64,000 bases of DNA, from positions 124,001 through 188,000 of the IMG/VR virus record IMGVR_UViG_3300044712_001255; one strand, given 5' to 3'. Position 1 is the first letter of the stretch. Every line of letters begins with the position of its first letter. The position numbers were made by a program, and so were the translations under genes. Positions 2,971 through 21,838 of the stretch are shown here, piece by piece. Below the pieces are notes generated by a model. The model was not told the DNA's origin and did not search any database. It saw only the letters and a list, made by a program, of their open reading frames with translations.

Positions 2971-5900
2971 ATGAGTAGTATCAATGATGGGAAAATTGCC
3001 CCGGAGTGTAGGAGGCCGACTCGTTATGTCAGCCTTCACAATCACTCCGGGGCGTCTTAGCTGCGTTCGATGGATTCGGACCAGTTGAGATTCACCTTGA
3101 GTTCTGTGTTAAGAATGGCCTCGATTGTCACGCCATAACAGAACACGGCCATATGAATAGCTACCCAGCTGCGCAGCTTCTCTCAGAAGATTGGGCAAAA
3201 AAGGGTAAAACGTTCAAATTCATCCCAGGCGTTGAGGCGTATGTTCATCCTAATCTTGATGAATGGCGTAAGCTAAAGGTCGAATCTGAAGAAGAGAAGG
3301 CGGCTAAGAAGGCGGCTAAGAAACGTGGCGAAGAAGAAGACGGCGTATCTGATGTTGACACAAATAATGCGTTAGTCGTTGAAAATGAAGACGCTACGAA
3401 ACAACGTTATCAGAATCCAGTAAACCGTCGTCACCATCTCGTATTGTTACCCAAGAACGCTCGAGGGCTCAAGAAAATCTTTGAGCTTGTCTCCTTTGGA
3501 TACATCGACGGGTTCTATCGTTTTCCCAGGATTGACCTGAGAGAGATTAAGCGAATTCAAGGTGATCAAGGCGATATCATTGCGTCGACTGCGTGCATTG
3601 GTGGTCCACTGGCGTATGAAGTCTTTGGCAAGGTGGGAGACGTAGAGTGGGACGCCATGAACGCCGATCTGTTGCGAGATGAGTTTCGTGCCAAGCAGAT
3701 CATAAATGCAATCGGTAACACATATGATCAGTACGTAGACGCCCTAGGACTGGGGAATGTGTACCTCGAGTTGCAGTTCAACAGGCTTCCGCAACAGGAC
3801 CTAGTAAACCACGCGATCATCAGGTACGCCAAGGAAAATGGCCTGACAAATCAGCTCATTGTCACCTGTGATGCCCACTATCCTGGACCAGAGATGTGGT
3901 TGTACCGCGAGATGTACAAGAAGCTAGGCCACATGAACTACGAGGAAATGGACCCCTCCAAGCTTCCTAAGTCCAAGGATGACATCAAGGCTGAACTGTA
4001 TCCTAAGAACGCGGAACAGTTGTGGTCAGAGTACCAGGCGACCAAGGGTCGATGTGATCTGTATGCCGACATGGATGATTTGGTGTGTGATGCCATCGAG
4101 CGATCGTATGACGTGGCTCATAATGTCATCGGCGATGTACCCGCAGACAAGACTCCCAAGTTCCCCAAAGCAGTTATCCCTGAAGGCAAGACAGCATTTC
4201 AAGAGCTTGTAGAGCGAGCGAAGCGTGGGCTTATTACAAAGGGCCACGATAAGAAGCCAGAATACGTGTCTCGTCTCAAGGAAGAACTGCTTGTGATGAA
4301 AGAACTTGGCATTGCTGAGTATTTCGTTACTCTTGCAAGAGTTCTTGAACTAGCTCGCACGAAGGTGCTTGTCGGAACATGTCGTGGCTCAGGTGGTGGT
4401 TCGCTTGTTGTGTATTGCCTTGGCATTACCGATGTTGATCCTGTGAAGTACGGGTTGTACTTCTCTCGATTCTTGTCAGTGTATCGTAAGGGTATGCCTG
4501 ACGTTGACATTGATATCGATGATCGCGATACTGTTCTTGATCTTTTGCGAGAGGAGTTTGGTAATACCAACGTCGTTCCCATCTCCAACTATAACTTGTT
4601 GAAGCTCAAGAGCCTCACCAAGGATGTGTGTAAGTTCTTTGGCGTTTCGTTTGAAGATGCAAACGCAGCAACACGTACCGTTGAAGATGATGTGCGTAAG
4701 GCAACATTGAAGGAGGGCGATGACAAGAATTTGTTTGAGCTCAAGTTCGATGATGCCATGAAGCATAGTCCAAGTTATCGAGCATTCATAGAGAAGCTGG
4801 CCGAAGAACACCCAGCAGCGGTAGACGCAATCAAGGCATTGTACAAGGAACAGCGTTCACTTGGGCGTCATGCTGGCGGTGTGCTTGTGGTGGATGACCT
4901 TCGCACAAAGATGCCATTGATCACTTCTGGCGGTGAACCACAGTCACCGTGGGTGGAAGGCATGGCGGTGAAGCACCTTGAGAAGGTTGGCAATTTTGTC
5001 AAGTATGATTTGCTTGGTCTTCTTACGCTTCGATTGATTCGTCGAACTGTTGAGCTTATCCTAGAGCGTAAGACTGGCCGCACGCCATCGTTTGATGAAA
5101 TCAAGGCGTATTACAATGCCCATCTACATCCCGACGTTTTGGATTTTGATGATCCCAAGGTCTATGAGTATGTTTTCCACTCTGGACGGTGGGCAGGTGT
5201 GTTCCAGTTCACCCAACGGCCAACGCAGCGATTCTGCGCTCAGTGTAAGCCAAGCAACGTGACTGACTTGGCGGCCATTACGTCAATCTGGCGTCCTGGC
5301 CCACTCGCAGGTAAGATGCATGAGCTTTACGTCGATGCAAAGTTCAATAAGCCGTATGACTGGGGTCATCCACTGTTGAATGAGACCCTTGCTGACACAT
5401 ATGGTCTGCTGATCTTTCAGGAACAGATCATGTTGCTGGCCAACAAGGTTGCAGGATATGACCTTGCAAAGTGCGATGAAGTCCGTCGAGCAATCTTGAA
5501 GCGTTCTCTTGCAACTGGCGAATCTGCTAAGAAGGAAGCTCGGGAGCTCGAAGACAGCTTTGTGAAGGGTTGCGTTGGAAATGGCGTTCCTGAATCGATT
5601 GCTCGAAAGCTATACGCAAACATCCTTGCGTGGGGTGGTTACGGCTTCAATAAGGCACACGCAACAGGGTACGCAATGATTTCATATCAGTGCGCGTACT
5701 TGATGACATATTTCGAGGAAGAGTGGCTATGTTCTTACCTCGAAAGTATGAGCAGGAGTGAGGACAACAAGGCGAAAGCTTTTAGTGAGATACGGTCATT
5801 GGGTTATCAGATTGTCCCAATTGATATCAATCATGCTTCTTTCGGTTGGACAATCCTTGACGGCAAGCGTTTCATGCCATCGTTCTTGACTTGTAAAGAC

Positions 5901-6584
5901 GTTGGATCTGCTGCCGTTGAAGAGATTGTGCGTGAGCGACCGTATGAAAAAATTCAAGATGTGCTGTGGGATGAGCAGGGAGACTGGAAGCACAGCAAGT
6001 TCAACAGCAAGGCTCTTGCTGCGCTCATAAGAATCGGTGCATTCCAAAGTCTAGATTGCATTGGCGATGATGATGAACACTTGTTTGATTCATACGCACA
6101 CATGTATGAGGTCATCATCAATCACCTGAATGATATCAAAAAGCATCCAGTCAAAGAACCCCTAAAGGGCATGAATGAATTCTACAAGCTGTCTCGTGAG
6201 CTCAAGGGTCAGATTGAGCCGTGGGACCGTCGGCAACTTGCAGAGCACAGCATCAAACACTTTGGCTCAATCGATGTAATGAACCTCATTGATCCAACTG
6301 TACTGCAAGTGTTTCAACAAAAGGGTATTTCGTCAATTGACGAGTACGATGATGCTGGCATCTATTGGTTCTGCATCACAAAGACTACGCCGAAAAAGAC
6401 GAAGAACGGTAAACACTATTTGCTTCTCGAGGCCCAAGGTCCAGGTGGTAAAACACACAAGATTTACATGTGGGGATGGGACGGCCACCGACAATTCGAA
6501 AGTTACGCAGTGTGCTTTGCCGAGTTGAAGCAAAGTGACTTTGGTTTCGGTACACAGATGAGCAAGCTCCGCGAGCTTGAGTGA
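2971..6584 (+). CDS. dnaE: DNA polymerase III alpha subunit (family C); PHP N-terminus interrupted by 5 extra nt at 3058-3062
   Basis: 2971-3057 gives YVSLHNHSGAS; 3063 onward gives AFDG...AITEHGHMN, then RGSGGGS, MPDVDID, RHAGG, RPGP, FNKAHA and a C-terminal OB fold. Confidence 0.95.
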
Positions 6585-8637: not shown

Positions 8638-9242
8638 CACTTCCTAAAGTCTGGCTGACGTCAGACACGCACTTTGGCCACGAAAACATCATCAAATATT
8701 GCAACCGACCGTTCAATGACGTGTGGCAAATGAATGTTGCGCTCACCACAATCTGGACGGGTAAGGTTACTGATGATGACATTGTCGTTCATCTTGGTGA
8801 TTTGACCTTGATGAAGGACCCAAAAAAGTACAAATCGACTTGGCAGCTTATCAGGTCTTTACCAGGTAAGAAGATACTAGTGAGAGGTAATCATGATCAC
8901 CCACGTATAGTTCCATACTTACGTGAAATTGGGTGGGTGATTGTCAATGAGATCATCTCGGAAAATGTCACAATGAGGCACATCCCGCCGACTGGAACCA
9001 GTGATGCTGACATCGTTTGTGCGCCTGATGTATTTCTACATGGGCACATCCACGGAAAGTCGCATCACAGAGATCATCCGAGTGGGAATTGCTATGATGT
9101 TGGTGTTGACGCGACGGCAGACTACGGTCCTGTGTTGCTCGATGGATTTCTAGAGGCAAAAGACCTTCCGCGAGTGAAACAAGCGTTGCTTGACATGTAC
9201 AATGCTAATGTCATCAACCCATCGGAGCACGAGAATGTTTAA
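8631..9242 (+). CDS. Calcineurin-like metallophosphoesterase
   Basis: SDTHFGH, LGD, GNHD, HGHIH motifs. Confidence 0.9.
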   Translation: MLTLPKVWLTSDTHFGHENIIKYCNRPFNDVWQMNVALTTIWTGKVTDDDIVVHLGDLTLMKDPKKYKSTWQLIRSLPGKKILVRGNHDHPRIVPYLREIGWVIVNEIISENVTMRHIPPTGTSDADIVCAPDVFLHGHIHGKSHHRDHPSGNCYDVGVDATADYGPVLLDGFLEAKDLPRVKQALLDMYNANVINPSEHENV

Positions 9243-9801
9243 ACAACACGTCATCTGCGTTGTAGGCCCAGATCGTATCGGTAAGACAACAATGGTGAAG
9301 TTGTTGTCGCATTGTTTGAACATCCCGTCATACAAGGCATCAAAGGAACAGAGTGATTTTCTAAATTCTCAAGACAAGTTCCTACAGCAACTACGACTTG
9401 CTGATCCGCGTCAGCTTGATTTGCTTGAACAGATCAAGTTTTCAATGATCATGGATCGTGGATGGGTATGCGAGTATCCCTATTCAAAGTTGTATGGTCG
9501 TAGCACTGACTTCAACCAATTGATGCAAAATGACGCGCGATACGCAGCGTTGGGTACAAAGATAGTGTTTTTGTATCGAACTTCGTACGCAGGACTTCAG
9601 GATGACTTGGATCCTACGCTTACTGACAAACGATTGCAGATCATCCATGATGGATACGAAGAATTCTTTCAAATTACGCGGTGTGAAGTTGTCAAACTTT
9701 GCGTAGATCCGCATGTTGGTGAAATGTACTATGATGAACAAGAAAAGCTCAACGAACTTATCAAGGCGTTGTTTCACACGGAGCTGATAAAAGGTGTCTG
9801 A
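9235..9801 (+). CDS. Deoxynucleoside monophosphate (thymidylate-like) kinase
   Basis: P-loop GPDRIGKTT near the N-terminus; MDRGWVCEYPY matches the dNMP-kinase DR motif. Confidence 0.7.
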   Translation: MFKQHVICVVGPDRIGKTTMVKLLSHCLNIPSYKASKEQSDFLNSQDKFLQQLRLADPRQLDLLEQIKFSMIMDRGWVCEYPYSKLYGRSTDFNQLMQNDARYAALGTKIVFLYRTSYAGLQDDLDPTLTDKRLQIIHDGYEEFFQITRCEVVKLCVDPHVGEMYYDEQEKLNELIKALFHTELIKGV

Positions 9802-11459: not shown

Positions 11460-12310
11460 GGTTGAATATGAATGTGCGCCTAATTGCATTGGGTACTGGT
11501 TCTGCATTTTCAATGAAGAATTGGCAGACGAATTTCCTGCTCGAGGTGATTGAAGCTGACGGCACTACACGTAGGTTACTGATCGATTGTGGCAGTGACG
11601 TACGATTCTCGCTGCGGGACGTTGGACTGTCATACCTCGATATTGACGCAGTGTATGTTTCTCATGCGCACGCAGACCACGTCGGTGGTATGGAATACAT
11701 CGGTTTCTGCTCTTACTTTGACAGGAGATATGTTGATCGTCGAATTGGCACAAGGGACGCGCAAACGAAGCCCACCTTGTTCTGTGAGCGTAATCTTCTG
11801 CGTACGCTGTGGGATTACTCGCTTCGTGGTGGAATGGAAGGTTTAGAGGGCGTAGACGCTACAATCTCTACGTTCTTCAACCCAAAGCCTGTTGAACGCA
11901 ACAAATCATTCACCTTTGCGGGTGTTGATTTTGACATTGTGCAAAGCGTACACGTCTCAGCGAAATACTGCATTGTGGATTCATTTGGTCTGATGTTCAC
12001 CGATCCAGTGAACACCAAGCGTGTCTACATTACAACTGACGTACAGTTTGCGCCTGAAACCAGCATGATGGCGTATTACAAGGAAGCAAATGTCATCATT
12101 CATGATTGTGAAACAGCAGGATTCAAGAGTGGTGTTCATGCGCACTACGATAACCTGAAGACTCTGAAACCAGAGATCAAGAAGAAGATGCGTCTAATTC
12201 ACTATCAGGATAATGTCATTGACAATTGGGATGAGTGGAGTAAAAAGGCACTCGACGATGAGTTCCATGGGTTTACGCAAAAGGGACTGATTTACTCGAG
12301 CGAGGAATAA
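11456..12310 (+). CDS. Metallo-beta-lactamase-fold phosphodiesterase, Apyc1 (anti-Pycsar)-like
   Basis: GTGSAFS, LLIDCG, SHAHADHVGGME, LWDYSLRGG, HV, TTD, HDC, GVHAHY, HYQDN. Confidence 0.75.
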   Translation: MRLNMNVRLIALGTGSAFSMKNWQTNFLLEVIEADGTTRRLLIDCGSDVRFSLRDVGLSYLDIDAVYVSHAHADHVGGMEYIGFCSYFDRRYVDRRIGTRDAQTKPTLFCERNLLRTLWDYSLRGGMEGLEGVDATISTFFNPKPVERNKSFTFAGVDFDIVQSVHVSAKYCIVDSFGLMFTDPVNTKRVYITTDVQFAPETSMMAYYKEANVIIHDCETAGFKSGVHAHYDNLKTLKPEIKKKMRLIHYQDNVIDNWDEWSKKALDDEFHGFTQKGLIYSSEE

Positions 12311-12313
12311 AGA

Positions 12314-13603
12314 ATGAAGAGATTGTTGATTGAGACACAGTTGAGCAATTACGATACCAAGGGTAAGTTCATCCTCGAGTGCGACTCAGGCTGGCAAATG
12401 TGTCTTGGACGAGTTCGAGAAATGTTAAAGTTGAATCCACAACTTTACATTGACGTATTGGGTCCCGACCTAACGCAGTGCCGCACATTGCCACATGAAG
12501 TCAATCAAGATATTTTTGGCGATAGGGTACGTTACATACCCATGAATATCATTCCAAATGCGTTGGCAACTCGATATGATTTTGACTTTGAAGGTATTGC
12601 AAAGGTGTTGAACCTTGGGTCTGACAATGATCCCAAGTACACGCATGTCTACATCAATGACCCAATGTTGTTACGGAACTATCGAGCATTGTTCTTGCTG
12701 AAGGCGAAGTACAAGCCGTTCTTTGCCGTTCACTCACACTTCGTGGATGTGCCTGAGTGTCCCAAGTTCCCAACAGAGGCCTCACTGTGGTTGGGCCAAT
12801 GTGAAGCTGCAATTAAGGCAGACTTCAACTTTTGGCAGTGCGAGTCTGCAATGTTGCAGTTCTTTGAGTCCATGAGCAACACGTATCGGTCAGATGTTGT
12901 CAAGGCGGTTAGAGATAAGTCGTTGCCATGGGATGACGGGTATTCAAGTGCAGAGATGCATCAACCTGTGAATTACGCAAATGTTCGCTTTAATGTTGAG
13001 CAACTACGGCGTGACATTAAGGATAAGACACTTGTGTTTGTTCCCAATCGAGTAGGTGGTCGTGGTAGAAGCAGCGATTACACAAATTGTGGTAAATTTC
13101 TTTTTGATGTTGTGCCTGAGATTTGGAAGAAGCGGCGTGACTTTACAATCATCGCAGGCAATCCAAATCAGAAGTTCAACAATGATGAGCTTGTCGAACT
13201 GTGTCCAGCAGTGATGAAGGTTGTACCTGATGCATTGAATCGCGATGAGTACAAGGTAATCGCGAAGATGCACGATATAAGCGTAGGACTCTTCAATGTT
13301 GATACCTTTGGTGGGACATCGTCTAGGGAATTATTGGATATTGGTAGCATCCCATTTTGGGTTGATAACTACGAGTACTCCTCAATCGCCAAGACGGTCA
13401 ATTGGCCGAATGATTTAATGACATTGTCAGATCTCAGCGACATCGCAGTGAAATTTGAAACATTGTTGGATTGGTATCAACAAACTCAACAATTTGATTT
13501 TACGCTTTCACAATGGCATGAAAAATTTCGTGACGTTGTTCGTAAACGATGCTCTTATGAGATTACGACCAAAGAAGCAATGAAAATAATGAATTTACTA
13601 TGA
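12314..13603 (+). CDS. GT-B glycosyltransferase, candidate DNA glycosyltransferase
   Basis: Two-domain size; C-terminal DTFGGTSSRELLDIG resembles the GT-B E-x7-E signature; lies next to the epimerase. Confidence 0.6.
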   Translation: MKRLLIETQLSNYDTKGKFILECDSGWQMCLGRVREMLKLNPQLYIDVLGPDLTQCRTLPHEVNQDIFGDRVRYIPMNIIPNALATRYDFDFEGIAKVLNLGSDNDPKYTHVYINDPMLLRNYRALFLLKAKYKPFFAVHSHFVDVPECPKFPTEASLWLGQCEAAIKADFNFWQCESAMLQFFESMSNTYRSDVVKAVRDKSLPWDDGYSSAEMHQPVNYANVRFNVEQLRRDIKDKTLVFVPNRVGGRGRSSDYTNCGKFLFDVVPEIWKKRRDFTIIAGNPNQKFNNDELVELCPAVMKVVPDALNRDEYKVIAKMHDISVGLFNVDTFGGTSSRELLDIGSIPFWVDNYEYSSIAKTVNWPNDLMTLSDLSDIAVKFETLLDWYQQTQQFDFTLSQWHEKFRDVVRKRCSYEITTKEAMKIMNLL

Positions 13604-14625
13604 TTCTTGAAATCATTGAAAGATGGGTAAAAACGTCTCGCTACAAATACAAAGGCAAACGTATTTTAACGGCCTTGTATAAATGTGATGCGTGTGGAAA
13701 AATTGAAGAATTGCCTTATCGCAAAGGACGTGAAAAACATCTTCGTGTTTGTTCACCTGAGTGTGATTCTCAATTGAGAAGTCGTGGTGGTAAACTTTAC
13801 AATAACATCACATCAACAAATGTTGATAAATACGGTGAAATTTTTGCTTCAAAGACGAATCTCTGTAAAGAGAAACAACGCCAAACAAACATCGAACGAT
13901 ATGGATGTGAATCTACATCGCAAAACATAGAGGTCCAGAAAAAGAGACATTCGACGTGCATGAAACGTTATGGCGGTCCTGCCCCCACTAGTGATCCAAG
14001 GGTAAGAGAAAAGGTTCGTGCAACTTGCATTCGTAAATTTGGTGGAGGTCATTTATTGGATCCTGAACTTCGTAGACGGTTTAATAATACGATGCGATCA
14101 AAGTATGGTTGTGATTGGGCGGTACAAAACAAAGAAATACGTGCAAAACAGTATCTTACAAATATCAAACGTTATGGCGTAATAGATCCTAGACATTCTG
14201 TAGAATCAAAGAGAAAGTGTGCTTCATTAGAAGTTGCTCAAAAACGTCATGAAACTATGAAACGCAATAAATCATACGGCAAATCAAAGCCTGAAGATCG
14301 ACTCTACGAAGTGCTTTGTGAAATCTTTGGTGTGGATGATGTGGAACGTCAGAAGACAGTGGAACGTTGGCCTATCGATTTCTACGTTAAGAGCATTGAT
14401 ACGTACGTGCAATACGACAGTTACTGGCATGGCGTAGGAAGAGACATTAATGAAATCGCAGAATACAAGAACAAACGTGATGTCATGATTCACAAGAAAA
14501 TGTTGACAGACATCAAACAAAACGCGTATTTTCTAGAACATCGTTTGAAACTCGTAAGAGTGTTGGGATTACAAATACGTGAAATTACTGTTGATTCAAT
14601 TAAAACACTGATGGGGTTGCTGTGA
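13600..14625 (+). mobile_element. Putative free-standing homing endonuclease (Zn finger + KYG repeats + Vsr-like PD-(D/E)xK domain)
   Basis: CDAC..C.C, repeated (K/R)YG units, WPIDFYVKSIDTYVQYDSYWH; AT-richer than flanks; paralogue at 36254. Confidence 0.65.
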
Positions 14626-14783
14626 CAGACGAAGAAATACAAGCAGACATCGATTATTTTACCAAGTGTTTGATTGATAACTTGAAGATTCCTAAGGAGT
14701 TTTTAGGCCACATCAAAGAGACACCCAATCCTCTTACAATTGAGGAAGACTTTGTGTTAGAGACCAAGGAGAAAAAAGAATGA
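14622..14783 (+). CDS. 53-aa ORF missing from the ORF track; resembles a portal-protein segment
   Basis: GTG 14622 to TGA 14783 with GTGA/ATGA overlaps on both sides; MTDEEIQADIDYFTKCLIDNLKIPKEFLGH... Confidence 0.55.
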   Translation: MTDEEIQADIDYFTKCLIDNLKIPKEFLGHIKETPNPLTIEEDFVLETKEKKE

Positions 14784-15736
14784 CAACTCGTGTGCTTATC
14801 ACAGGCGGTGCAGGTTTCATCGGTAGTAATCTCGCAAAGCGATGTGTAGATGAAGGATTTGAAGTCACCATTGTCGATGATATGTCGAATGGTCACGAAG
14901 AGTTTGTGCCAAAGGGCGTCAAACAGTTCTATAAGTGTGATTTCACTGCGCCTGCAGTGATGATAGACATTGCATTACAAAAATTTGATCTTGTGTTTCA
15001 CGTCGCTGCGCTCCCTCGAGTGAGCTACTCAGTTGAGCATCCCATAGAGACAAATGACGTCAATGTGACGAAGTCTCTTAGATTGATCAATGCATGTCGC
15101 GGTAATGTGAAGCGAATTGTTTTTTCAAGTTCATCTTCAGTGTACGGCGGCGCAGATGAGTTGCCTACACATGAGTCTGCCCCATTTCGTCCCAAGTCTC
15201 CCTATGCTCTGCAGAAGGCAATCATTGAGCAGTACCTCAGGCTCTACAACGAGACGTATGAGTTGGAGTCGTGTTGCCTGCGTTACTTCAATGTATTTGG
15301 GAAAAATCAATTAGGATCTTCGCCATACGCAACAGCTGTTTCTGCGTGGCTCACGGCTATCAAGCAAGGCAAGCCTATGCGTTCGGACGGTGATGGCACA
15401 CAGAGCCGAGATATGTGTCATGTAGACAATGTTGTTGAAGCCAATGTCCTAGCTGCAAAGTCGACTAAGGACCTACGAGGTCGTGCGTACAATGTCGCAT
15501 GCGGTGACAGGACAACCAACAATCAGATCCTTGAATATCTGAAGATGAGATATCCAGCAGCCACGAGCTACAACGCGCCTTACAGGGTGGGTGATGTGAT
15601 GCATACCCAGGCCGATATCTCTCGTATCAAAGAAGAATTGGGATACGAGGTACAGGTAAGATTCTTTGATGGCCTTGAGAGGACCATTGAATGGTATGAG
15701 ACGTCTGAGCTTGCGAAGTTAGCGTTGAAGGTGTGA
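14780..15736 (+). CDS. NAD-dependent NDP-sugar epimerase/dehydratase (extended SDR)
   Basis: TGGAGFIGS, SSSSVYG, YALQK (YxxxK), RYFNVFG. Confidence 0.92.
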   Translation: MTTRVLITGGAGFIGSNLAKRCVDEGFEVTIVDDMSNGHEEFVPKGVKQFYKCDFTAPAVMIDIALQKFDLVFHVAALPRVSYSVEHPIETNDVNVTKSLRLINACRGNVKRIVFSSSSSVYGGADELPTHESAPFRPKSPYALQKAIIEQYLRLYNETYELESCCLRYFNVFGKNQLGSSPYATAVSAWLTAIKQGKPMRSDGDGTQSRDMCHVDNVVEANVLAAKSTKDLRGRAYNVACGDRTTNNQILEYLKMRYPAATSYNAPYRVGDVMHTQADISRIKEELGYEVQVRFFDGLERTIEWYETSELAKLALKV

Positions 15737-15737
15737 A

Positions 15738-16286
15738 ATGACTTGTATTATCGGAATTGAACACAATGGGCGTTGTTACGTCGGTGGCGATTCAGCAGGA
15801 ATTTCAAATTATGACGTCACCATCAGGCGTGATGAGAAGGTGTTCACGAACGGCGAATTCGTAATAGGATTTACGTCATCGTTCAGAATGGGCCAAATCC
15901 TACGTTACAGGTTTGATCCACCAAAGCATCATCCCGACCAAGACGTTATGGAATACATGGTTGTCAATTTCATAGATGCTGTGAGGGAAACATTCAAGGC
16001 ATCAGGGTGGACTCCACAAGAAGATACATCAAAGGGTATTGAATGTAGCGGTACGTTCATAGTCGGCTATAAAGGGCGCATTTTTGAGATTGAAGGTGAT
16101 CTTCAGGTATCATCTCCTTCATGTGGAATTGCAACTTGTGGATGTGGCTATGCGCTTGCCCTTGGAGCAATGGACGCATTGTCAGAATACGAACATGACG
16201 TTGAAAACCGTATCAAAAAAGCATTGTCAATTGTGGCAAAGCGAAATTGCGGCGTGCATGCGCCGTTCATCGTAAAGAGCGTGTAG
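15738..16286 (+). CDS. Ntn-hydrolase, HslV/proteasome-beta-like protease 1
   Basis: N-terminal MTCIIG, GDS, K at about position 33, CGCG in the GSG position. Confidence 0.7.
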   Translation: MTCIIGIEHNGRCYVGGDSAGISNYDVTIRRDEKVFTNGEFVIGFTSSFRMGQILRYRFDPPKHHPDQDVMEYMVVNFIDAVRETFKASGWTPQEDTSKGIECSGTFIVGYKGRIFEIEGDLQVSSPSCGIATCGCGYALALGAMDALSEYEHDVENRIKKALSIVAKRNCGVHAPFIVKSV

Positions 16287-16314: not shown

Positions 16315-16860
16315 ATGACGTGCATTGTTGGTGTTGTGTATGGAAAGAACGTTTGGCTCGGCGGCGATAGGGCTGCGACGTCTGGTAATCTCAATAGGAC
16401 AATCATCAAAGATCCAAAGGTGTTCGTGAAAGAGAACATTGGATTTGGTGTGTGCGGATTGCCAAAGGTGATGGACACACTGCAATATCACATTGAGATT
16501 CCTGTGTACAATGGCGAAAACGTAAAGACGTATCTTGTGTCATCTGTCATTCCTGCAATTCGCAGTGGGCTCAAGGCGATGGACTGTACGGTTCACCACG
16601 AAGGACAAGATTATTTTGAGGGAGCGATGTTGGTCGCTTTCAATGGTCGTCTCTTTGAACTCGAAGCAAATTTCCAGCTTGTAGAATCAAGCAAGGGGTT
16701 CAATGCAGTTGGATCCGGTGCTGAACCCGCATTGGGGTCGCTAAGGGCAACAAAGGGCAATCCACGAACTCGTCTGCTTCAGGCTTTGCAAACGTCTGCC
16801 GAGAACAATGCAGGCGTGGCTCCACCTTTTGATGTGATTGAGATCAAGCGACAGAAATAA
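16315..16860 (+). CDS. Ntn-hydrolase, HslV/proteasome-beta-like protease 2
   Basis: MTCIVG, GDR, PKVF, AVGSG. Confidence 0.75.
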   Translation: MTCIVGVVYGKNVWLGGDRAATSGNLNRTIIKDPKVFVKENIGFGVCGLPKVMDTLQYHIEIPVYNGENVKTYLVSSVIPAIRSGLKAMDCTVHHEGQDYFEGAMLVAFNGRLFELEANFQLVESSKGFNAVGSGAEPALGSLRATKGNPRTRLLQALQTSAENNAGVAPPFDVIEIKRQK

Positions 16861-16863
16861 GCG

Positions 16864-17118
16864 ATGTCGCCGGGTGACATTATTGAGTGGGTGTACAAAT
16901 CGAACAATAAAGTTGTTGACACGAATGAACATCTTTGGTCACATACAATGACACGATGGGTACCCATCGGGTGCCCTGCTCTTCTCATTCATATAGATGA
17001 TTATGTATATACATGGCTCAACCAGAAAGGGTTGTTCCATGCACGCGTAGGTGATACGTGGGTCTTGGAGACGGTGATGAGGCGCACCGTCTCGGTTGTT
17101 CCACACACACGTGGGTGA
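16864..17118 (+). CDS. PGDMIEW-family small protein, copy 3
   Basis: Paralogue of 390-656; stop TGA lies inside the second repeat. Confidence 0.8.
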   Translation: MSPGDIIEWVYKSNNKVVDTNEHLWSHTMTRWVPIGCPALLIHIDDYVYTWLNQKGLFHARVGDTWVLETVMRRTVSVVPHTRG

Positions 17119-17169: not shown

Positions 17170-17439
17170 ATGTTGCCCGGAGACATGATCGAGTGGGTAT
17201 ACGTAGACACCGGTGATGTTGTTGACATAAATGAAAAGTTGTGGTCATGCACAATGTCTACATGGGCGCCTGTTGGGCGCCCTTCACTTCTCATATCAAT
17301 AGATGAAAAGATATATTCTTGGTTGACATCCATTGGCATATTTCATGCACTTATGAGTGACGTGTACTCAGAAGGTGTATGTACAGAATCTTCGTGTCAC
17401 ATTTACCCACGAAAAATAGAGGCGCGCTTTAATACATAA
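17170..17439 (+). CDS. PGDMIEW-family small protein, copy 4 (most diverged)
   Basis: PGDMIEWVY...GIFHALMSD; repeat remnants at 17337 and 17401 (period 64). Confidence 0.75.
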   Translation: MLPGDMIEWVYVDTGDVVDINEKLWSCTMSTWAPVGRPSLLISIDEKIYSWLTSIGIFHALMSDVYSEGVCTESSCHIYPRKIEARFNT

Positions 17440-17896: not shown

Positions 17897-18898
17897 ATGG
17901 AGCACAACTACCAATCGTTTACGACAGCATACGCAGGACTGATTAAGGATGTTTACGAGAATCCTGATTTTGTATGTGCTCCACGCGGGCAGAAGATCAA
18001 GGAGAAGTTGGGTGTCAAGTTTGTCATCCAGAATCCACGAGCTCGATTGCCATTCATCAAGGAACGTAAGTTCTCTGTTGCGTATGTGATAGCTGAGGCG
18101 TTGTGGTATCTCAGCGGTAACAACAGCACTGAATGGATCTCTTACTATTCGAAGTTCTGGCGTGACATCAGCGACGATGGCGTAACTGCAAATTCAGCGT
18201 ATGGCGCTAGAATTTTCAAGCCACATTCTCGATCTGGCGCGTTGTCCCATGATGATGGGTGGACGCAGTGGAACTGGCTGATTGATGAGCTAGCGGCAGA
18301 CAACGACTCTCGTAGGGCCGTCGTGCACATCAGGAGCCCTCTCGATTCTCGATTGGCCAAGAAGGATGTACCCTGCACGCTGACCCTTCAATTTTTTCTG
18401 AGGGATGACAAGGTGCATCAGGTCGTCTCTATGAGGTCTTCTGACCTCGTCTTGGGCATCGCTAACGACATTCCGGCGTTTACGATTTTCCAAGAGCTCT
18501 TGGCGTTGGACCTCACTGAACGTTTGAAGCGTCCCATCGGATTGGGAACATATACACACGTCAGTAACTCTTTGCACATTTACGAGAGGAACTTTACGTT
18601 GGTGGAGTCTATCATCAATACGACTGAAGATCTGACGAAATACGATGATGAGTCATACGCCATGCCCGCCATGCCAAGCAAGCCTCCGTTGGTAGATCTC
18701 AATTGTCATGAATCAATGATTCGAGTTGCGACAGCAGGTGTACGATTGACGCACGCCAACTATCGTACTTCAGATCCATACTGGCGAGATTGGCAGACGA
18801 TCTTAGCACGTCATCGTTGTCAGAAGTGGGATATTGACTGTAATTTTGACGTTCTTGGTGGGATCAATTGGCCACACTACGGATTCTTTGAGGAGTGA
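17897..18898 (+). CDS. Thymidylate-synthase-family enzyme with dCMP hydroxymethylase (T4 gp42-like) signature
   Basis: NSAYG, DVPCTLTLQF, MRSSDLVLGIANDIPAF (Asp at the ThyA Asn177-equivalent position), SLHIYERNF. Confidence 0.75.
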   Translation: MEHNYQSFTTAYAGLIKDVYENPDFVCAPRGQKIKEKLGVKFVIQNPRARLPFIKERKFSVAYVIAEALWYLSGNNSTEWISYYSKFWRDISDDGVTANSAYGARIFKPHSRSGALSHDDGWTQWNWLIDELAADNDSRRAVVHIRSPLDSRLAKKDVPCTLTLQFFLRDDKVHQVVSMRSSDLVLGIANDIPAFTIFQELLALDLTERLKRPIGLGTYTHVSNSLHIYERNFTLVESIINTTEDLTKYDDESYAMPAMPSKPPLVDLNCHESMIRVATAGVRLTHANYRTSDPYWRDWQTILARHRCQKWDIDCNFDVLGGINWPHYGFFEE

Positions 18899-18899
18899 T

Positions 18900-19502
18900 A
18901 TGACATGTGTAGTTGGCTACAAAGATGGCGATGCCATCTATCTTGGGTCTGACAGCTACGTGGGTAGCGTCGAAAATGGCATTCAACATGTCCTGGCAAA
19001 TCCAGAGAAGATCTTTCAAACGGGACAGTTCTTGATTGGTGTCGCGGGTAGCATGCGCATCGGTCAACTTCTTCACCACGGTCTACGCGTCGCAAAGCAG
19101 AGACGTGGTGATTCAGATCAAAAGTACTTAGTGATCAATGTGATGAGTGCCATCAGGTCTTTGTTACAGGAACACTGTCAGTGGGGCTCCGCAGAAGATG
19201 ATTCCGAAGTGGGCATGATGTATGACACTGATTTGATCCTAGCCTACAAGAATCAAATCTACATGATCGACGTAGACCTGCAAGTACAGCAGATCGTAGG
19301 AAACTATGTCTGCATCGGCTCCGGCCGCGAGGTGGCCAATGGTGCTATGTTCGCTTTTGAAAATGGCGATGTTGCAGAAGTAGCTGTATCAGCTCCCGAC
19401 CGCATAAAACTTGCGCTTCAGGCGGCAACGCACCATCAATCTGGTATTTTGCCGCCTTACCATATCATGCAGCTCAAGAACGGTATAGTTTCTAAGGTAT
19501 GA
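18900..19502 (+). CDS. Ntn-hydrolase, HslV/proteasome-beta-like protease 3
   Basis: MTCVVG, SDS, EKIF, CIGSG. Confidence 0.7.
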   Translation: MTCVVGYKDGDAIYLGSDSYVGSVENGIQHVLANPEKIFQTGQFLIGVAGSMRIGQLLHHGLRVAKQRRGDSDQKYLVINVMSAIRSLLQEHCQWGSAEDDSEVGMMYDTDLILAYKNQIYMIDVDLQVQQIVGNYVCIGSGREVANGAMFAFENGDVAEVAVSAPDRIKLALQAATHHQSGILPPYHIMQLKNGIVSKV

Positions 19503-20080
19503 AGTTGCCGATGCAAAATCCTCAATTTATTGTCTATTGTGGTCCAATGTGGTCGGCAAAGACAACGTCTATGTTGCTTCGCCTTGAACGTTTTGAGTTA
19601 CAAGGACGAAAAGTTAAGCTGTTCAAACCAAATATCGATGAACGATATGATGCAAAGTTTGAAGTTGTAACTCACTCTGGGTGGAAACGTGCCGCAGTGC
19701 CTATCAAGAATGCGGTTGATATCCTCAAAGAGATTGAGAATGATCCACCCGAAGTGATTGCGCTCGACGAAGCGTTCATGGTGAAGGATAGCCATAAGGT
19801 ATTGGTGTGGTTATTCAAGACAGGAGTGACTATTGTAGTCTCGAGCCTTGATTTGAGTTTTAAGGGAGTACCTTTCAAAGAAGTTGAAAAGATGCTGTCA
19901 TGGGCGACGGAGGTGCATAAGTGCGCTGCCGTTTGCAAGGCATGTGGTTCTGACGCATTCTACACATATCGTAAGAATGATGACAACGAAGATATCATAG
20001 TGGGTGGTGCTGAGCTCTATGAGAGTAGGTGTTTCAGGTGTCATCCCATCATTGACGAGAGACCTGGTGACTATGAGTGA
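19499..20080 (+). CDS. tdk: Thymidine kinase
   Basis: GPMWSAKTT, LDEAF, CxxC...Y..RCxxC. Confidence 0.88.
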   Translation: MKLPMQNPQFIVYCGPMWSAKTTSMLLRLERFELQGRKVKLFKPNIDERYDAKFEVVTHSGWKRAAVPIKNAVDILKEIENDPPEVIALDEAFMVKDSHKVLVWLFKTGVTIVVSSLDLSFKGVPFKEVEKMLSWATEVHKCAAVCKACGSDAFYTYRKNDDNEDIIVGGAELYESRCFRCHPIIDERPGDYE

Positions 20081-20576
20081 GATACAACGTCCTACTTGGC
20101 CACAAAAGTGGATGAACATCGCCAGAGAAATTTCTGAGATGTCTTATGATTCGCGCTTGAAAGTTGGCGCAATTATCGTCCCAGTTGACAATACTGGCAT
20201 ACTTTCATTGGGATTCAACGGCAATGCTCACGGCCTTCCCAACAAACGTGACAGCGAAGAAGAGGGCAAGGCGGGTTTCATTCACGCAGAGCAAAATTGT
20301 TTCTATAAACTTGATTATCGACACCCATCACAGAAGGTTCTATACGTTCTCTATTCGCCTTGTCCTGAATGCGCAAAAGGCGCAATACAGTGTAAGATAA
20401 ACAGAGTTGTTTATGATAAACCTTTTCGAGATACGCGTGGTATAGACATTCTGAATATGGGCGGAATCGAAGTGTACACGCTCGATGAAGCGATATTCCT
20501 GGCGCAACAAGGCATCTGGGGAGATGAACATTGTAAGGTAGATCGCAAGGTCGCGCTGACAAGTTTACGTCCATAG
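20073..20576 (+). CDS. dCMP deaminase
   Basis: KVGAII, GFNG, HAEQN, SPCPECAK. Confidence 0.9.
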   Translation: MSEIQRPTWPQKWMNIAREISEMSYDSRLKVGAIIVPVDNTGILSLGFNGNAHGLPNKRDSEEEGKAGFIHAEQNCFYKLDYRHPSQKVLYVLYSPCPECAKGAIQCKINRVVYDKPFRDTRGIDILNMGGIEVYTLDEAIFLAQQGIWGDEHCKVDRKVALTSLRP

Positions 20577-21112: not shown

Positions 21113-21838
21113 ATGTCTAACATCGATCTATCAGAAACCGATCTTCAAAAGATTGTAAGCGAGTCACTATCAAAAAGTCTCAGCAAGCATGGCGTTGCGC
21201 CGGCTGAATCAACGAAGTTGTCTGAGGCTTATGTCGTCGATACGAAAACGTATAAGTTGACCACTGACAACTTATCGCAGAAGACTAAGGACGGACACGT
21301 CCAGTTGTATCAGGATTATGTTCGTGTCGCGAACACAGTATCCGCTGAACTTGATTCCACGAATAAAAGTGATGCAAACTCGAGTCACTCGCAGTTCAGG
21401 TCATTGAAGCTGGATGAATCGTACAATCTCAATGCGAAGTGGCTGCACGAGCTGTACTTTTCGAATTGCTTTGATCCAAATAGCGAAATCTTCATGGATT
21501 CGCAAGCGTACATACGCCTTCAGCGCGACTTCGGTACGTTTGAGAACTGGCAGAAAGATTTCATGGCATGTGCAATGTCTGCCGGCGAAGGGTGGGCAGT
21601 CACTGGATGGCATCATTATCTGAAGCGCTACGTCAACACAATTGTCAGTCACCACAGCGGCGACGTGATGATGGGTTTGTATCCTGTGATTGTGCTAGAC
21701 GTTTGGTCACATGCGTATCACAGAGATTACGTTGTAGATCGTAAGAGCTACATTGTTGCAATGATGCGAGAGCTTAATTGGAACACCATTGAAAATCGTT
21801 TCAAGATGTGCGAACGCATGGCAGAGGTGATGAAGTGA
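21113..21838 (+). CDS. Fe/Mn superoxide-dismutase-like protein
   Basis: HVQLY..YV, WLHELYF, FG.FE.W..DF, LDVWSHAY (canonical DVWEHAY). Confidence 0.75.
   Translation: MSNIDLSETDLQKIVSESLSKSLSKHGVAPAESTKLSEAYVVDTKTYKLTTDNLSQKTKDGHVQLYQDYVRVANTVSAELDSTNKSDANSSHSQFRSLKLDESYNLNAKWLHELYFSNCFDPNSEIFMDSQAYIRLQRDFGTFENWQKDFMACAMSAGEGWAVTGWHHYLKRYVNTIVSHHSGDVMMGLYPVIVLDVWSHAYHRDYVVDRKSYIVAMMRELNWNTIENRFKMCERMAEVMK

What the first reader, a model, noticed from the sequence alone, without database searches (positions are those of the whole stretch)
17897..18898. ThyA-family enzyme has the dCMP-hydroxymethylase signature: likely modified-cytosine genome
Seen: PCTLTLQF and MRSSDLVLGIANDIP. Known: ThyA has PCH and QRSxD...PFNI, where Asn177 selects dUMP. 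T4 gp42 has CT, MRSND and Asp at that position, selecting dCMP. Inference: it makes 5-hydroxymethyl- (or methyl-) dCMP. The dNMP kinase (9235), dCMP deaminase and thymidine kinase fit a rerouted pyrimidine pool.
Basis: partly seen in the sequence, partly recalled or inferred. Interest (0 to 1): 0.7.

Follow-up and report, generated by a model that had tools for sequence, protein, structure and literature searches.

The report
Jumbo-phage dCMP hydroxymethylase gene module
This gene in an uncultivated 324-kb phage almost certainly makes 5-hydroxymethyl-dCMP, the building block T4 uses to replace cytosine in its DNA, so it is a well-supported new member of a known phage DNA-modification system.

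Summary
The ORF at 17897-18898 (+, 333 aa) is real and both quoted motifs are in it. It is the only ThyA-family gene in a 324,468-bp IMG/VR phage record that also carries ThyX and no DHFR.

In E. coli ThyA numbering, 15 of 16 active-site positions match T4 gp42: Cys146, Asp177 (cytosine), Asp143 (all verified hydroxymethylases have Asp/Glu), Asp169 (not the Asn of 5-hydroxy-dCMP synthases), Ser167 and Arg126 (deoxyribose, unlike MilA's Ala/Lys), Thr147. MilA is the closest solved structure, including its five-helix C-terminal domain. 264 of 271 aligned sequences share the signature.

In 60 related viral loci, a thymidylate-kinase-like gene (50/60) and a UDP-sugar 4-epimerase (54/60) lie next to the hydroxymethylase. 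One subclade fuses hydroxymethylase and kinase. This window also has a GT4-like glycosyltransferase upstream of the epimerase. Relatives carry that gene or a 5hmC-type carbamoyltransferase in the same slot, never both.

Verdict: dCMP hydroxymethylase (about 0.8). 5hmC-derived cytosine in the DNA is likely, and glycosylation is possible. This is a new member of a known kind. Enzyme activity, extent of replacement and final adduct are inferred.

The parts
17897..18898 (+). Long-form deoxycytidylate 5-hydroxymethyltransferase (dCMP hydroxymethylase). It has a ThyA-fold core plus a MilA-like five-helix C-terminal domain (about residues 245-333). Key residues: Cys160 (nucleophile), Asp191 (=N177), Asp157 (=L143), Asp183 (=D169), Ser181 (=S167), Arg139/Arg140 (=R126/R127), Thr161 (=H147), Glu67, Tyr102, His227, Tyr229.
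9235..9801 (+). P-loop thymidylate-kinase/dNK-like protein, the candidate hydroxymethyl-dCMP (dNMP) kinase. A separate bona fide Tmk lies next to ThyX outside the window.
   Evidence: PHROG 761 at E 2e-6. Phage G gp315 kinase hits it at E 2.6e-4. Atlas places it among viral Tmk/dNK clusters with TM 0.8-0.86. Homologues are present within 10 kb of the HMase in 50/60 related loci, at a median centre-to-centre offset of -774 bp, i.e. adjacent. HMase-kinase fusions exist.
12314..13603 (+). Virus-specific GT4-like retaining GT-B glycosyltransferase. It is a candidate DNA (5hmC) glycosyltransferase, but its acceptor is unproven.
   Evidence: No Pfam, PHROG or PDB sequence hit. Atlas gives TM 0.7-0.8 to GT1/GT4 enzymes and an AGT cluster among feature hits. 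AF2 model has pLDDT 92.9. Foldseek and VIA-align match BshA (Z 28.8), MshA, PglA and PimA. 426 homologues occur on jumbo-phage contigs. It is near the HMase in only 9/60 loci.
14780..15736 (+). NAD-dependent UDP-hexose/UDP-HexNAc 4-epimerase (WbgU/WbpP-like) with intact GGAGFIG and Y142xxxK146 motifs. It is the candidate supplier of the sugar donor.
   Evidence: PF01370 at E 2e-57. PHROG 540 at E 7e-73. PDB 6dnt, WbgU and WbpP at E 1e-47 to 1e-55. Motifs confirmed. Adjacent to the HMase in 54/60 related loci.
19499..20080 (+). Thymidine kinase (thymidine salvage).
   Evidence: PF00265 at E 1e-39. Found in 35/60 related loci.
20112..20576 (+). dCMP deaminase. It converts dCMP to dUMP, feeding ThyX, and balances the dCMP pool as T4 cd does.
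   Evidence: PF00383 at E 9e-16 and PHROG 174 at E 8e-38. Gene start taken. Found in 52/60 related loci.
3153..6584 (+). DnaE-type DNA polymerase III alpha, the replicase that would have to accept the modified dNTP. It is syntenic with the module in 54/60 relatives.
   Evidence: PF07733, PF17657, PF02811 and PF14579

Best explanation
The ORF encodes a folate-dependent dCMP hydroxymethylase (EC 2.1.2.8 chemistry). Cys160 attacks C6 of dCMP. Asp191 reads the N3/N4 face of cytosine. Methylene-tetrahydrofolate donates the one-carbon unit. Water, admitted by the acidic residue Asp157 in place of ThyA's Leu143, hydrates the exocyclic methylene to give 5-hydroxymethyl-dCMP plus THF. The enzyme is a 'long form' that shares MilA's C-terminal helical domain but carries the deoxyribose determinants Ser181 and Arg139'. 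The inferred downstream steps are as follows. A phage Tmk-like kinase (9235-9801) makes the diphosphate, a host NDP kinase makes the triphosphate, and the phage DnaE polymerase incorporates it. A gp56-like all-alpha pyrophosphatase beside ThyX-Tmk may deplete dCTP. dTMP is supplied separately by dCMP deaminase, ThyX, Tmk and TK. After replication, 5hmC is possibly glycosylated by the GT4-like enzyme (12314-13603) using a UDP-sugar made by the adjacent 4-epimerase. The purpose is protection of phage DNA from host nucleases. What is shown: the gene, its fold, its residue signature and the gene linkage. What is inferred: activity, incorporation, extent of replacement and the final adduct.
For: (1) Signature. 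At 16 active-site positions the query equals T4 gp42 at 15 (re-aligned). It differs from E. coli ThyA (L143, H147, N177), SPO1 dUMP hydroxymethylase (N177), RB69 5-hydroxy-dCMP synthase (N169), XP12 5-methyl-dCMP synthase (N143, P147) and MilA-type enzymes (K126, A167). The diagnostic meaning of these positions comes from PMC5175136, PMC13326640 and PMC8670742.
(2) Similarity. The best PDB sequence hits are MilA (E about 1e-40) and T4 dCH (7e-16), ahead of any ThyA (>=2.6e-12). The AF2 model (pLDDT 94.5) matches MilA over its whole length (TM 0.79-0.82), then T4 dCH.
(3) Family. 264 of 271 aligned sequences (265 database relatives, the query and 5 reference enzymes) share R-D-C-S-D-D. The query sits in starred clades of 4, 15 and 26 proteins that all carry this signature. 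MilA homologues form a separate starred clade.
(4) Genome logic. This is the only PF00303 gene. ThyX and Tmk are elsewhere in the record. There is no DHFR. A gp56-like dUTPase_2 ORF lies at genome 110438-110812.
(5) Linkage. Kinase 50/60, epimerase 54/60 and dCMP deaminase 52/60 are near the HMase, and the trio's internal order permutes. HMase-Tmk-like fusions exist. T4 and phage G likewise place a DNA glucosyltransferase near their HMase gene.
(6) Published experiments. Asp177/non-His147 ThyA homologues are enriched on modified-cytosine metavirome contigs (PMC8670742). Phage 5hmC glycosyltransferases often need a partner epimerase, and GT-B types associate with thymidylate-synthase-type pathways (bioRxiv 10.1101/2023.12.21.572611).
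Against: No biochemical or mass-spectrometric data exist for this protein or any close relative (<=62% identity to anything in the protein databases searched, and below 40% to any named phage). Position 143 is not a clean methyl/hydroxymethyl switch, because XP12's methylase has Asn there, not a bulky hydrophobic residue. T4 gp42, RB69 gp48 and ThyA are long branches, so the tree does not prove common descent of function. The dCTPase candidate is weak (27 bits; T4 gp56 phmmer E 3.5e-6 against only 449 ORFs). The trimeric dUTPase is a generic dUTPase. Full replacement of C is therefore unproven. The GT-like gene is absent from the +/-10 kb neighbourhood in 51/60 relatives and was not detected in five large relatives, one of them complete. 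It is therefore not an obligate partner, and its acceptor could be a glycan or a protein. Conserved synteny within one phage lineage partly reflects shared ancestry.
Confidence: 0.78

Rival explanations
1. It is a dCMP methyltransferase like that of Xanthomonas phage XP12. It would make 5-methyl-dCMP by reductive methyl transfer, so the genome would carry 5mC rather than 5hmC.
For: Asp at position 177 is shared with XP12's enzyme. XP12 has Asn rather than a bulky hydrophobic residue at 143, so the 143 rule is imperfect.
Against: The query has Asp143 and Thr147, like T4 gp42, MilA and phage G gp319, whereas XP12 has Asn143 and Pro147. Reductive methylation yields dihydrofolate, and XP12 carries a DHFR two genes away, just beyond its dCMP deaminase. 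No DHFR was found in this 324-kb record. The top sequence and structure matches are hydroxymethylases.
Confidence: 0.06
2. 5hm-dCMP is made but is mostly deaminated by the neighbouring dCMP deaminase to 5hm-dUMP. The modified base in DNA would then be a thymine analogue (5hmU or a derivative) rather than a cytosine analogue.
For: A dCMP deaminase lies 1.2 kb downstream and is conserved in 52/60 relatives. From general knowledge, T-even dCMP deaminases can act on hm-dCMP.
Against: The genome invests in a full dTMP route (ThyX plus adjacent Tmk plus TK), which argues that thymine is kept. T4 has the same deaminase/HMase/TK set and uses the deaminase to supply dUMP. MetaGPA links this domain combination to modified cytosine (PMC8670742).
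Confidence: 0.05
3. It is a MilA/BcmA-like CMP (ribonucleotide) hydroxymethylase. Its product would feed a small-molecule or RNA pathway rather than DNA.
For: MilA is the closest solved relative in sequence and over the whole fold, including the C-terminal domain.
Against: Both residues shown by mutagenesis to set ribose preference are of the deoxy type here: Ser181 versus MilA Ala176, and Arg139 versus MilA Lys133 (PMC5175136). True MilA homologues with K..A form a separate starred clade. No MilB-like partner was noticed. The gene is embedded in DNA-precursor genes.
Confidence: 0.04
4. It is a flavin-dependent 5-hydroxy-dCMP synthase of the RB69 gp48, DLP3 gp80 or HY126 AfhB type, and the genome would carry glycosylated 5-hydroxycytosine.
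For: It has the same superfamily, Asp177 and an acidic residue at 143. A sugar-nucleotide enzyme and a glycosyltransferase lie nearby, as in RB69.
Against: The diagnostic D169N substitution is absent: the query has Asp183, and all 26 members of its clade have Asp (PMC13326640). HY126 AfhB is a much weaker hit (E 2e-9) than MilA or T4 dCH.
Confidence: 0.03
5. It is an ordinary thymidylate synthase or a dUMP hydroxymethylase acting on dUMP, as current database annotation says ('thymidylate synthase').
For: Pfam, PHROG and source annotations all read 'thymidylate synthase'.
Against: Asn177 is replaced by Asp. His147 and Leu143 are replaced as well. ThyX is present elsewhere in the record.
Confidence: 0.02

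Closest known systems
Bacteriophage T4 gp42, dCMP hydroxymethylase (PDB 1B49/1B5E/6A9A), with its partners gp1, gp56, cd, tk and alpha/beta-glucosyltransferases
   Same: The active-site signature is identical at 15 of 16 positions, including Cys146, Asp177, Asp143, Asp169, Ser167, Arg126/127 and Thr147. The companion logic also matches: dCMP deaminase, TK, a dedicated kinase, and a glycosyltransferase near the HMase gene.
   Different: Identity is only about 27%. The query is 87 residues longer, with a C-terminal five-helix domain that gp42 lacks. The kinase is Tmk-like and not a gp1 homologue. dTMP comes from ThyX, not a ThyA-type td. The polymerase is DnaE-type. No T4-type alpha- or beta-GT was detected, and the candidate transferase is GT4-like with a partner 4-epimerase.
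MilA, CMP 5-hydroxymethylase of mildiomycin biosynthesis (PDB 5JNH/5B6D)
   Same: It is the closest solved relative (E about 1e-40, about 30% identity, TM about 0.8 over the full length), including the extra C-terminal helical domain. It shares Asp177 and Asp143.
   Different: MilA's ribose-preference residues Lys133 and Ala176 are Arg and Ser in the query. Mutating MilA's residues to Arg and Ser (A176S/K133R) reversed its preference to dCMP (PMC5175136). The context here is phage DNA-precursor genes, not an antibiotic gene cluster.
Metavirome ThyA homologues linked to modified cytosine, and the 5hmC carbamoyltransferase (MetaGPA, eLife 2021, PMC8670742)
   Same: Asp177 and a non-His147, co-occurring with dCMP deaminase and a MazG-like pyrophosphatase. 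Relatives of this phage (e.g. L025/L045) carry a carbamoyltransferase about 2 kb upstream of the HMase.
   Different: This genome has no carbamoyltransferase. A GT4-like gene occupies the equivalent upstream position instead.
Phage 5hmC glycosyltransferase and partner-epimerase modules (bioRxiv 10.1101/2023.12.21.572611)
   Same: The glycosyltransferase, sugar epimerase and 5hmC-producing enzyme are clustered. GT-B types were reported to associate with thymidylate-synthase-type (pre-replicative) pathways.
   Different: Those characterised modules use methyltransferase plus TET-like dioxygenase to make 5hmC after replication. The GT here has no detectable sequence similarity to named families, and its acceptor is untested.
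Bacillus phage G gp319 with gp313, gp315 and gp317
   Same: It is a long-form HMase with an R-D-C-S-D-D signature next to a Tmk-like kinase, a dCMP deaminase and an alpha-glucosyltransferase. Its kinase hits the window's 9235 ORF.
   Different: It is 38% identical and groups with SPO1 gp29 in the tree, not with the query's clade. No modification data for phage G were found here.

Membership tests
dCMP hydroxymethylase (T4 gp42 type, EC 2.1.2.8) | ThyA/thymidylate-synthase fold | tested here: met
   PF00303 at E 1.5e-21. AF2 model pLDDT 94.5. Foldseek probability 1.0 to T4 dCH, MilA and ThyA structures.
dCMP hydroxymethylase (T4 gp42 type, EC 2.1.2.8) | Catalytic cysteine (E. coli C146) plus conserved Glu58, Tyr94, Arg166, His207 and Tyr209 | tested here: met
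   Cys160, Glu67, Tyr102, Arg180, His227 and Tyr229.
dCMP hydroxymethylase (T4 gp42 type, EC 2.1.2.8) | Asp in place of Asn177 (cytosine rather than uracil) | tested here: met
   Asp191. SPO1 gp29 and E. coli ThyA have Asn at this position.
dCMP hydroxymethylase (T4 gp42 type, EC 2.1.2.8) | Acidic residue in place of Leu143 (water access, so hydroxymethyl rather than methyl) | tested here: met
   Asp157, as in T4, MilA-like proteins, SPO1 and phage G. XP12's methylase has Asn, so the rule is suggestive and not absolute.
dCMP hydroxymethylase (T4 gp42 type, EC 2.1.2.8) | Deoxyribose determinants Ser167 and Arg126' | tested here: met
   Ser181 and Arg139. Their meaning comes from MilA mutagenesis (PMC5175136).
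dCMP hydroxymethylase (T4 gp42 type, EC 2.1.2.8) | Common clade with T4 gp42 | tested here: inconclusive
   Both lie inside a 148-row group (SH-aLRT 91, not starred). T4 gp42 is a 3.1-substitution long branch, so its placement is unreliable.
dCMP hydroxymethylase (T4 gp42 type, EC 2.1.2.8) | Conversion of dCMP plus CH2-THF to 5hm-dCMP plus THF, and 5hmC in virion DNA | not testable with these tools
   Requires an enzyme assay or LC-MS.
T4-like hmC replacement system | dCTPase that removes dCTP (gp56) | tested here: inconclusive
   The 124-aa ORF at genome 110438-110812 matches PF08761 at 27.3 bits (cut-off 22.9), T4 gp56 by phmmer at E 3.5e-6 in a 449-ORF database, and PRA-PH at E 0.0045. Its specificity is unknown.
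T4-like hmC replacement system | Kinase that accepts hm-dCMP (gp1) | tested here: inconclusive
   There is no gp1 homologue. The Tmk/dNK-like ORF at 9235-9801 is adjacent to the HMase in 50/60 relatives and is fused to it in a subclade.
T4-like hmC replacement system | T4-family alpha- or beta-glucosyltransferase | tested here: not met
   PF09198 gave no hit, but it rang in no control genome either. T4 beta-gt gave no tblastn hit. T4 AGT and BGT are not among the top 50 structural matches of the GT-like protein.
MilA-type CMP hydroxymethylase | Lys133 and Ala176 (ribose preference) | tested here: not met
   The query has Arg139 and Ser181. True MilA homologues (P0216, E 1e-95 to MilA) have K and A and form their own clade.
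MilA-type CMP hydroxymethylase | Extra C-terminal five-helix domain | tested here: met
   Five helices lie between residues 246 and 331 of the model. The whole-length TM to MilA is 0.79-0.82 (PMC5175136).
5-hydroxy-dCMP synthase (RB69 gp48, DLP3 gp80, HY126 AfhB) | Asn in place of Asp169 | tested here: not met
   The query has Asp183. RB69 gp48 has Asn (PMC13326640).
Canonical thymidylate synthase ThyA | Asn177, His147 and Leu143 | tested here: not met
   The query has Asp191, Thr161 and Asp157. ThyX is present elsewhere.
dCMP methyltransferase (XP12 type) | Asp177 with a non-acidic 143, and a DHFR partner for DHF recycling | tested here: not met
   The query has Asp143. No PF00186 was found in the 324-kb record, which is 86% complete, so the absence is not absolute.

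The most novel reading that the evidence does not exclude
The kinase, hydroxymethylase and UDP-sugar 4-epimerase trio may be the conserved core of a cytosine-hypermodification system in a large, uncultivated jumbo-phage lineage, with an exchangeable 'decoration' slot upstream of it. In this phage the slot holds a previously unannotated GT4-like glycosyltransferase family. That enzyme would attach an epimerase-derived sugar (for example Gal or GalNAc from UDP-Glc or UDP-GlcNAc) to 5hmC in DNA, giving a glycosyl-hmC adduct not yet described. Some relatives use a carbamoyltransferase in the same slot instead.
Probability: 0.3. Interest if true: 0.6.

Novelty: new member of a known kind. Interest (0 to 1): 0.45.

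Why it matters
The result re-annotates a family of more than a thousand metagenomic 'thymidylate synthases' as probable dCMP hydroxymethylases. It implies that a widespread lineage of 100-350 kb phages replaces or decorates cytosine. That affects how their DNA behaves in sequencing, cloning, restriction and CRISPR targeting. It also shows that the 'long form' with MilA's C-terminal domain is mainly a phage dCMP enzyme, which places the antibiotic enzyme MilA as a ribose-adapted offshoot of that group. The tight linkage to a sugar 4-epimerase, and the mutually exclusive glycosyltransferase and carbamoyltransferase neighbours, give concrete and cheap candidates for finding new DNA adducts and new DNA-modifying enzymes.

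Tried and rejected
- Megablast of 20 kb of the window against 50,697 phage records found nothing. The nearest named phages are below 40% identical at protein level.
- The 9190-9798 ORF against PDB sequences gave only generic P-loop hits.
- MazG (PF03819) gave no hit at E<=0.1 in the genome.
- The T4 beta-GT profile gave no hit, but it rang in no control genome, so that negative is uninformative.
- T4 gp1 and T4 beta-gt gave no tblastn or phmmer hit in the genome.
- The GT-like ORF had no PDB sequence match and no Pfam or PHROG family.
- The GT-like protein was searched in five large related records, including a complete one with terminal repeats, and nothing was found. No positive control was run, so this is weak evidence.
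- Palindrome and restriction-site avoidance: no GC-containing 4- or 6-mer palindrome is strongly depleted (median observed/expected 0.97). This is compatible with protection by modification but does not discriminate.
- The seven glycosyltransferase-profile hits at the contig ends belong to a full glycan and sugar-nucleotide cluster (Gmd, PseB-like, DegT, UDP-sugar dehydrogenase). I judged this more likely a glycan pathway than the DNA-modification partner, and it is unresolved.
- I considered whether position 143 alone separates methyl from hydroxymethyl products. I rejected it as a strict rule after XP12 showed Asn143.
- MilA itself could not be put in the tree because no sequence id was available. 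A close homologue (P0216) stood in for it.
Full report
**Observation.** The ORF 17897-18898 (+, 333 aa) exists, and its translation contains both quoted strings. It is a bona fide gene. It matches Pfam Thymidylat_synt at E 1.5e-21 and four PHROG 'thymidylate synthase' families at up to E 1.5e-47. It has 1017 homologues at E<=1e-10 in the 5.8-billion-protein collection. It also has 7530 cluster representatives at E<=0.001, of which 383 are at E<=1e-30. The window is bases 124001-188000 of a 324,468-bp IMG/VR virus record (JGI sample 3300044712) with a CheckV completeness estimate of 86%. No phage record is similar at the nucleotide level. The nearest named phages are below 40% identical at protein level: an uncultured 462-kb phage, Bacillus phage G gp319, a Manatee Spring contig annotated 'pyrimidine hmase', and SPO1 gp29.

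**What the enzyme is.** MilA, the CMP 5-hydroxymethylase, is the best solved relative by sequence at E about 1e-40. T4 dCMP hydroxymethylase follows at 7e-16, and thymidylate synthases start at about 1e-12. I fetched enzymes of known activity from annotated records:
- E. coli ThyA
- T4 gp42
- RB69 gp48, a 5-hydroxy-dCMP synthase
- SPO1 gp29, a dUMP hydroxymethylase
- the XP12 ThyA homologue, a 5-methyl-dCMP synthase
- phage G gp319

I aligned them with the query and its relatives. The table gives the query's residues in E. coli ThyA numbering.

| E. coli position | Query residue |
|---|---|
| Glu58 | Glu67 |
| Trp80 | Trp88 |
| Tyr94 | Tyr102 |
| Arg126 / Arg127 | Arg139 / Arg140 |
| Leu143 | Asp157 |
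| Cys146 | Cys160 |
| His147 | Thr161 |
| Gln165 | Met179 |
| Arg166 | Arg180 |
| Ser167 | Ser181 |
| Asp169 | Asp183 |
| Asn177 | Asp191 |
| His207 | His227 |
| Tyr209 | Tyr229 |

This equals T4 gp42 at 15 of 16 compared positions. Only position 168 differs (Ser versus Asn).

**What the positions mean.** The meaning of each position comes from published work. Asp at 177 selects cytosine. An acidic residue at 143 accompanies hydroxymethyl products. Asn at 169 is diagnostic of the flavin-dependent 5-hydroxy-dCMP synthases (PMC13326640). Ala176 and Lys133 in MilA, in place of Ser and Arg, give ribose preference, and the A176S/K133R double mutant reverses it (PMC5175136). The controls behaved as expected:

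| Enzyme | Residues that differ from the query |
|---|---|
| SPO1 gp29 | Asn177 |
| RB69 gp48 | Asn169 |
| XP12 ThyA homologue | Asn143 / Pro147 |
| MilA homologues | Lys126 / Ala167 |
| E. coli ThyA | Leu143 / His147 / Asn177 |

One caveat emerged. XP12's Asn143 shows that position 143 is not a strict methyl/hydroxymethyl switch. All verified hydroxymethylases, and the query, do have Asp or Glu there.

**Structure.** An AlphaFold2 model built on a 66-sequence alignment is confident (pLDDT 94.5, pTM 0.93). Foldseek against the PDB puts MilA first over the whole length (TM 0.79-0.82 by query, 0.81-0.86 by target). T4 dCH and many ThyA structures follow. The 90-residue C-terminal extension forms five helices, like the extra C-terminal domain described for MilA. 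That domain lies away from the active site, and truncating it made MilA insoluble. The protein is therefore a 'long-form' pyrimidine hydroxymethylase with MilA's architecture and T4 gp42's specificity residues.

**Family and tree.** 264 of the 271 aligned sequences have the six-residue signature R126-D143-C146-S167-D169-D177. That set comprises 265 database relatives, the query and the 5 reference enzymes. The exceptions are three of the reference enzymes, three MilA-like proteins (K..A) and one R-D-C-A-D-D protein. In a 161-row maximum-likelihood tree, the query lies in nested well-supported clades of 4, 15 and 26 proteins, all with this signature. The MilA-like proteins form their own clade (SH-aLRT 99). 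P0216 from that clade is a close MilA homologue, at E 1e-95. T4 gp42, RB69 gp48 and ThyA are very long branches whose placement is unreliable. The functional assignment therefore rests on the residue signature and context, not on tree position relative to T4.

**Genome logic.** The ORF is the only PF00303 gene in the record. A flavin-dependent ThyX lies at genome 108782-109456 and is followed immediately by a bona fide thymidylate kinase. dTMP synthesis is therefore covered independently. No DHFR is detectable. That fits ThyX plus a hydroxymethylase, because neither produces dihydrofolate. It argues against an XP12-like reductive methylase, since XP12 has a DHFR two genes from its enzyme. Right after ThyX-Tmk lies a 124-aa ORF that passes Pfam's threshold for the all-alpha dUTPase_2 family (27.3 bits against a 22.9 cut-off). 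It is the best match in the genome to T4's gp56 dCTPase (phmmer E 3.5e-6 in a 449-ORF database) and weakly matches PRA-PH. It is a candidate, not a proven, dCTP-depleting enzyme. A trimeric dUTPase, an intein-containing RNR and an HD-domain protein lie nearby. Within the window, thymidine kinase and dCMP deaminase follow the hydroxymethylase, as in T4's gene repertoire.

**Linkage across relatives.** I fetched 80 related viral loci, of which 60 have at least 8 kb on both sides. Their hydroxymethylases are 38-63% identical to the query. Counts of the window's proteins near the hydroxymethylase were as follows.

| Window protein | Loci with a homologue (of 60) | Median centre-to-centre offset |
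|---|---|---|
| UDP-sugar 4-epimerase | 54 | +1.0 kb (adjacent) |
| P-loop kinase (9235) | 50 | -0.8 kb (adjacent) |
| dCMP deaminase | 52 | not computed |
| SOD-like protein | 54 | about +5.9 kb |
| DnaE | 54 | about -3.8 kb |
| Thymidine kinase | 35 | about +1.8 kb |
| gp56-like ORF | 29 | about -5.6 kb |

The internal order of kinase, hydroxymethylase and epimerase permutes between loci while the three stay together. That argues for functional coupling beyond inherited synteny. A subclade of 470-550-residue relatives fuses the hydroxymethylase to a thymidylate-kinase/dNK-like domain. Phage G's kinase gp315, which lies four genes upstream of its gp319 in the same cluster, is the best external hit to the window's 9235 ORF. 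By language-model and structure search, that ORF falls among viral Tmk/dNK-like clusters. Together these results support a dedicated kinase step for the modified nucleotide, analogous to T4 gp1.

**Possible decoration.** The epimerase is a WbgU/WbpP-like UDP-hexose/HexNAc 4-epimerase (E 1e-47 to 1e-55 to solved enzymes) with intact GxxGxxG and YxxxK motifs. Upstream of it, separated by a DUF7487 homing-endonuclease-like gene, is a 429-aa ORF with no Pfam, PHROG or PDB sequence match. Its confident model (pLDDT 92.9) is a GT4-type retaining GT-B glycosyltransferase. The closest structures are BshA (Z 28.8), MshA, PglA and PimA. The Atlas search gave the same fold and included a T4 DNA alpha-glucosyltransferase cluster among its feature hits. 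The protein belongs to a family of 426 'hypothetical proteins' found largely on jumbo-phage contigs, several of them the same contigs that carry the hydroxymethylase. However, it lies within 10 kb of the hydroxymethylase in only 9 of 60 loci. It was also not detected in five large related records, one of them complete. Four of the 60 loci instead carry a carbamoyltransferase 2-4 kb upstream of the hydroxymethylase, and none has both genes. MetaGPA showed that this kind of carbamoyltransferase converts 5hmC to 5-carbamoyloxymethylcytosine and co-occurs with Asp177 ThyA homologues only on modified contigs (PMC8670742). A preprint shows that phage 5hmC glycosyltransferases frequently require a partner epimerase, and that GT-B types associate with thymidylate-synthase-type pathways. 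The glycosylation reading is therefore plausible but unproven. I put it at about 0.3-0.4.

**Rivals.** An XP12-like methylase, deamination of the product to a 5hmU precursor, a ribonucleotide (MilA-like) role, a 5-hydroxy-dCMP synthase and a plain thymidylate synthase were each tested. Each fails on at least one tested residue or context criterion (see the Rival explanations section). Together they hold about 0.2 of the probability.

**Comparison and novelty.** This works like T4 gp42 and meets every sequence-testable defining feature of a dCMP hydroxymethylase. It does not meet the defining features of MilA-type, RB69-type, XP12-type or canonical ThyA enzymes. The chemistry and the biological strategy are known. 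Metagenomic surveys have already noted ThyA(D177) modules with deaminase, pyrophosphatase, carbamoyltransferase, glycosyltransferase and epimerase neighbours. What is new here is the assignment of this particular large clade of long-form enzymes, all annotated 'thymidylate synthase' or left unannotated. Also new are the near-universal kinase-hydroxymethylase-epimerase trio and an unannotated GT4-like family as a candidate decoration enzyme. I rate it a new member of a known kind, with moderate interest (0.45).

**Limits.** Nothing here measures activity or DNA composition. The weak palindrome-avoidance signal is only compatible with modification. The record is 86% complete, so the absences of DHFR and of a carbamoyltransferase are not absolute.

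Noticed in passing
window 15738-16286, 16315-16860, 18900-19502: Three paralogous HslV/proteasome-like peptidase genes (PHROG 1040, E 1e-15 to 9e-24) flank the hydroxymethylase. Homologues occur beside the HMase in only 6 of 60 relatives.
   Followed up: partly
window 16864-17118 and 17170-17439: Two adjacent small ORFs (84 and 89 aa) are evident paralogues: both begin M-S/L-PGD-I/M-IEWVY and share a ...NE-H/K-LWS... motif. They have no family hit and unknown function.
   Followed up: no
window 11456-12310: A metallo-beta-lactamase-fold protein matches the anti-Pycsar Apyc1 family above threshold (PF23023, 83 bits against a 50 cut-off). It is a likely cyclic-nucleotide-degrading counter-defence gene.
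   Followed up: no
window 13600-14625 and 36254-37114; genome 310801-311724 and 314794-315555: Several DUF7487 / homing-endonuclease-like genes (PHROG 3339) are scattered through the genome. One sits between the GT-like gene and the epimerase, which are directly adjacent in relative L024.
   Followed up: partly
window 21113-21838: A protein with only the C-terminal domain of Fe/Mn superoxide dismutase (PF02777, E 1e-19) is syntenic with the HMase module in 54/60 relatives. Its role is unknown.
   Followed up: partly
window about 25892-26311 (L009:17996-18415): A pterin-4a-carbinolamine-dehydratase-like ORF (PF01329, weak here but unmarked in relatives L024 and L025) is conserved downstream of the module. 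It may relate to pterin or folate handling.
   Followed up: no
genome C1:1-6000 and 308000-324468 (outside the window): The two contig ends carry a large sugar-nucleotide and glycan cluster on the minus strand: four to five GT1 and two GT2 enzymes, a UDP-Glc/GDP-Man dehydrogenase, a DegT aminotransferase, a PseB-like dehydratase, GDP-mannose 4,6-dehydratase and a methyltransferase. Its target (virion, host surface or DNA) is unknown. The two halves would be contiguous if the genome is circularly permuted.
   Followed up: partly
genome C1:104251-108441 (outside the window): The ribonucleotide reductase large subunit (1396 aa) is interrupted by an intein with an HNH endonuclease (PF02867, PF14890, PF13392).
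   Followed up: no
proteins P0154, P0157, P0181, P0198 and related (about 470-550 aa): One subclade of the family is a natural fusion of the hydroxymethylase (R-D-C-S-D-D signature) with a C-terminal thymidylate-kinase/dNK-like domain.
   Followed up: partly
L025:7584-9350 (contig Ga0114969_10000001, 297,894 bp, terminal repeats, complete): A complete relative carries an O-carbamoyltransferase two genes upstream of its hydroxymethylase, two epimerase genes and a dUTPase_2-like ORF. By analogy with MetaGPA it is a candidate 5-carbamoyloxymethylcytosine phage.
   Followed up: partly
window 56001-60000: A GC-rich island (0.61 and 0.55 in consecutive 2-kb windows, against about 0.47 genome-wide) with several minus-strand ORFs. 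It was not examined.
   Followed up: no
window 37095-37919, 38202-39227, 40022-40834, 43963-45471: A second 5'-3' exonuclease (a first lies upstream of the window), an RNA ligase, a glucosaminidase-domain protein and an AAA ATPase. There are no tRNA genes in the window.
   Followed up: no
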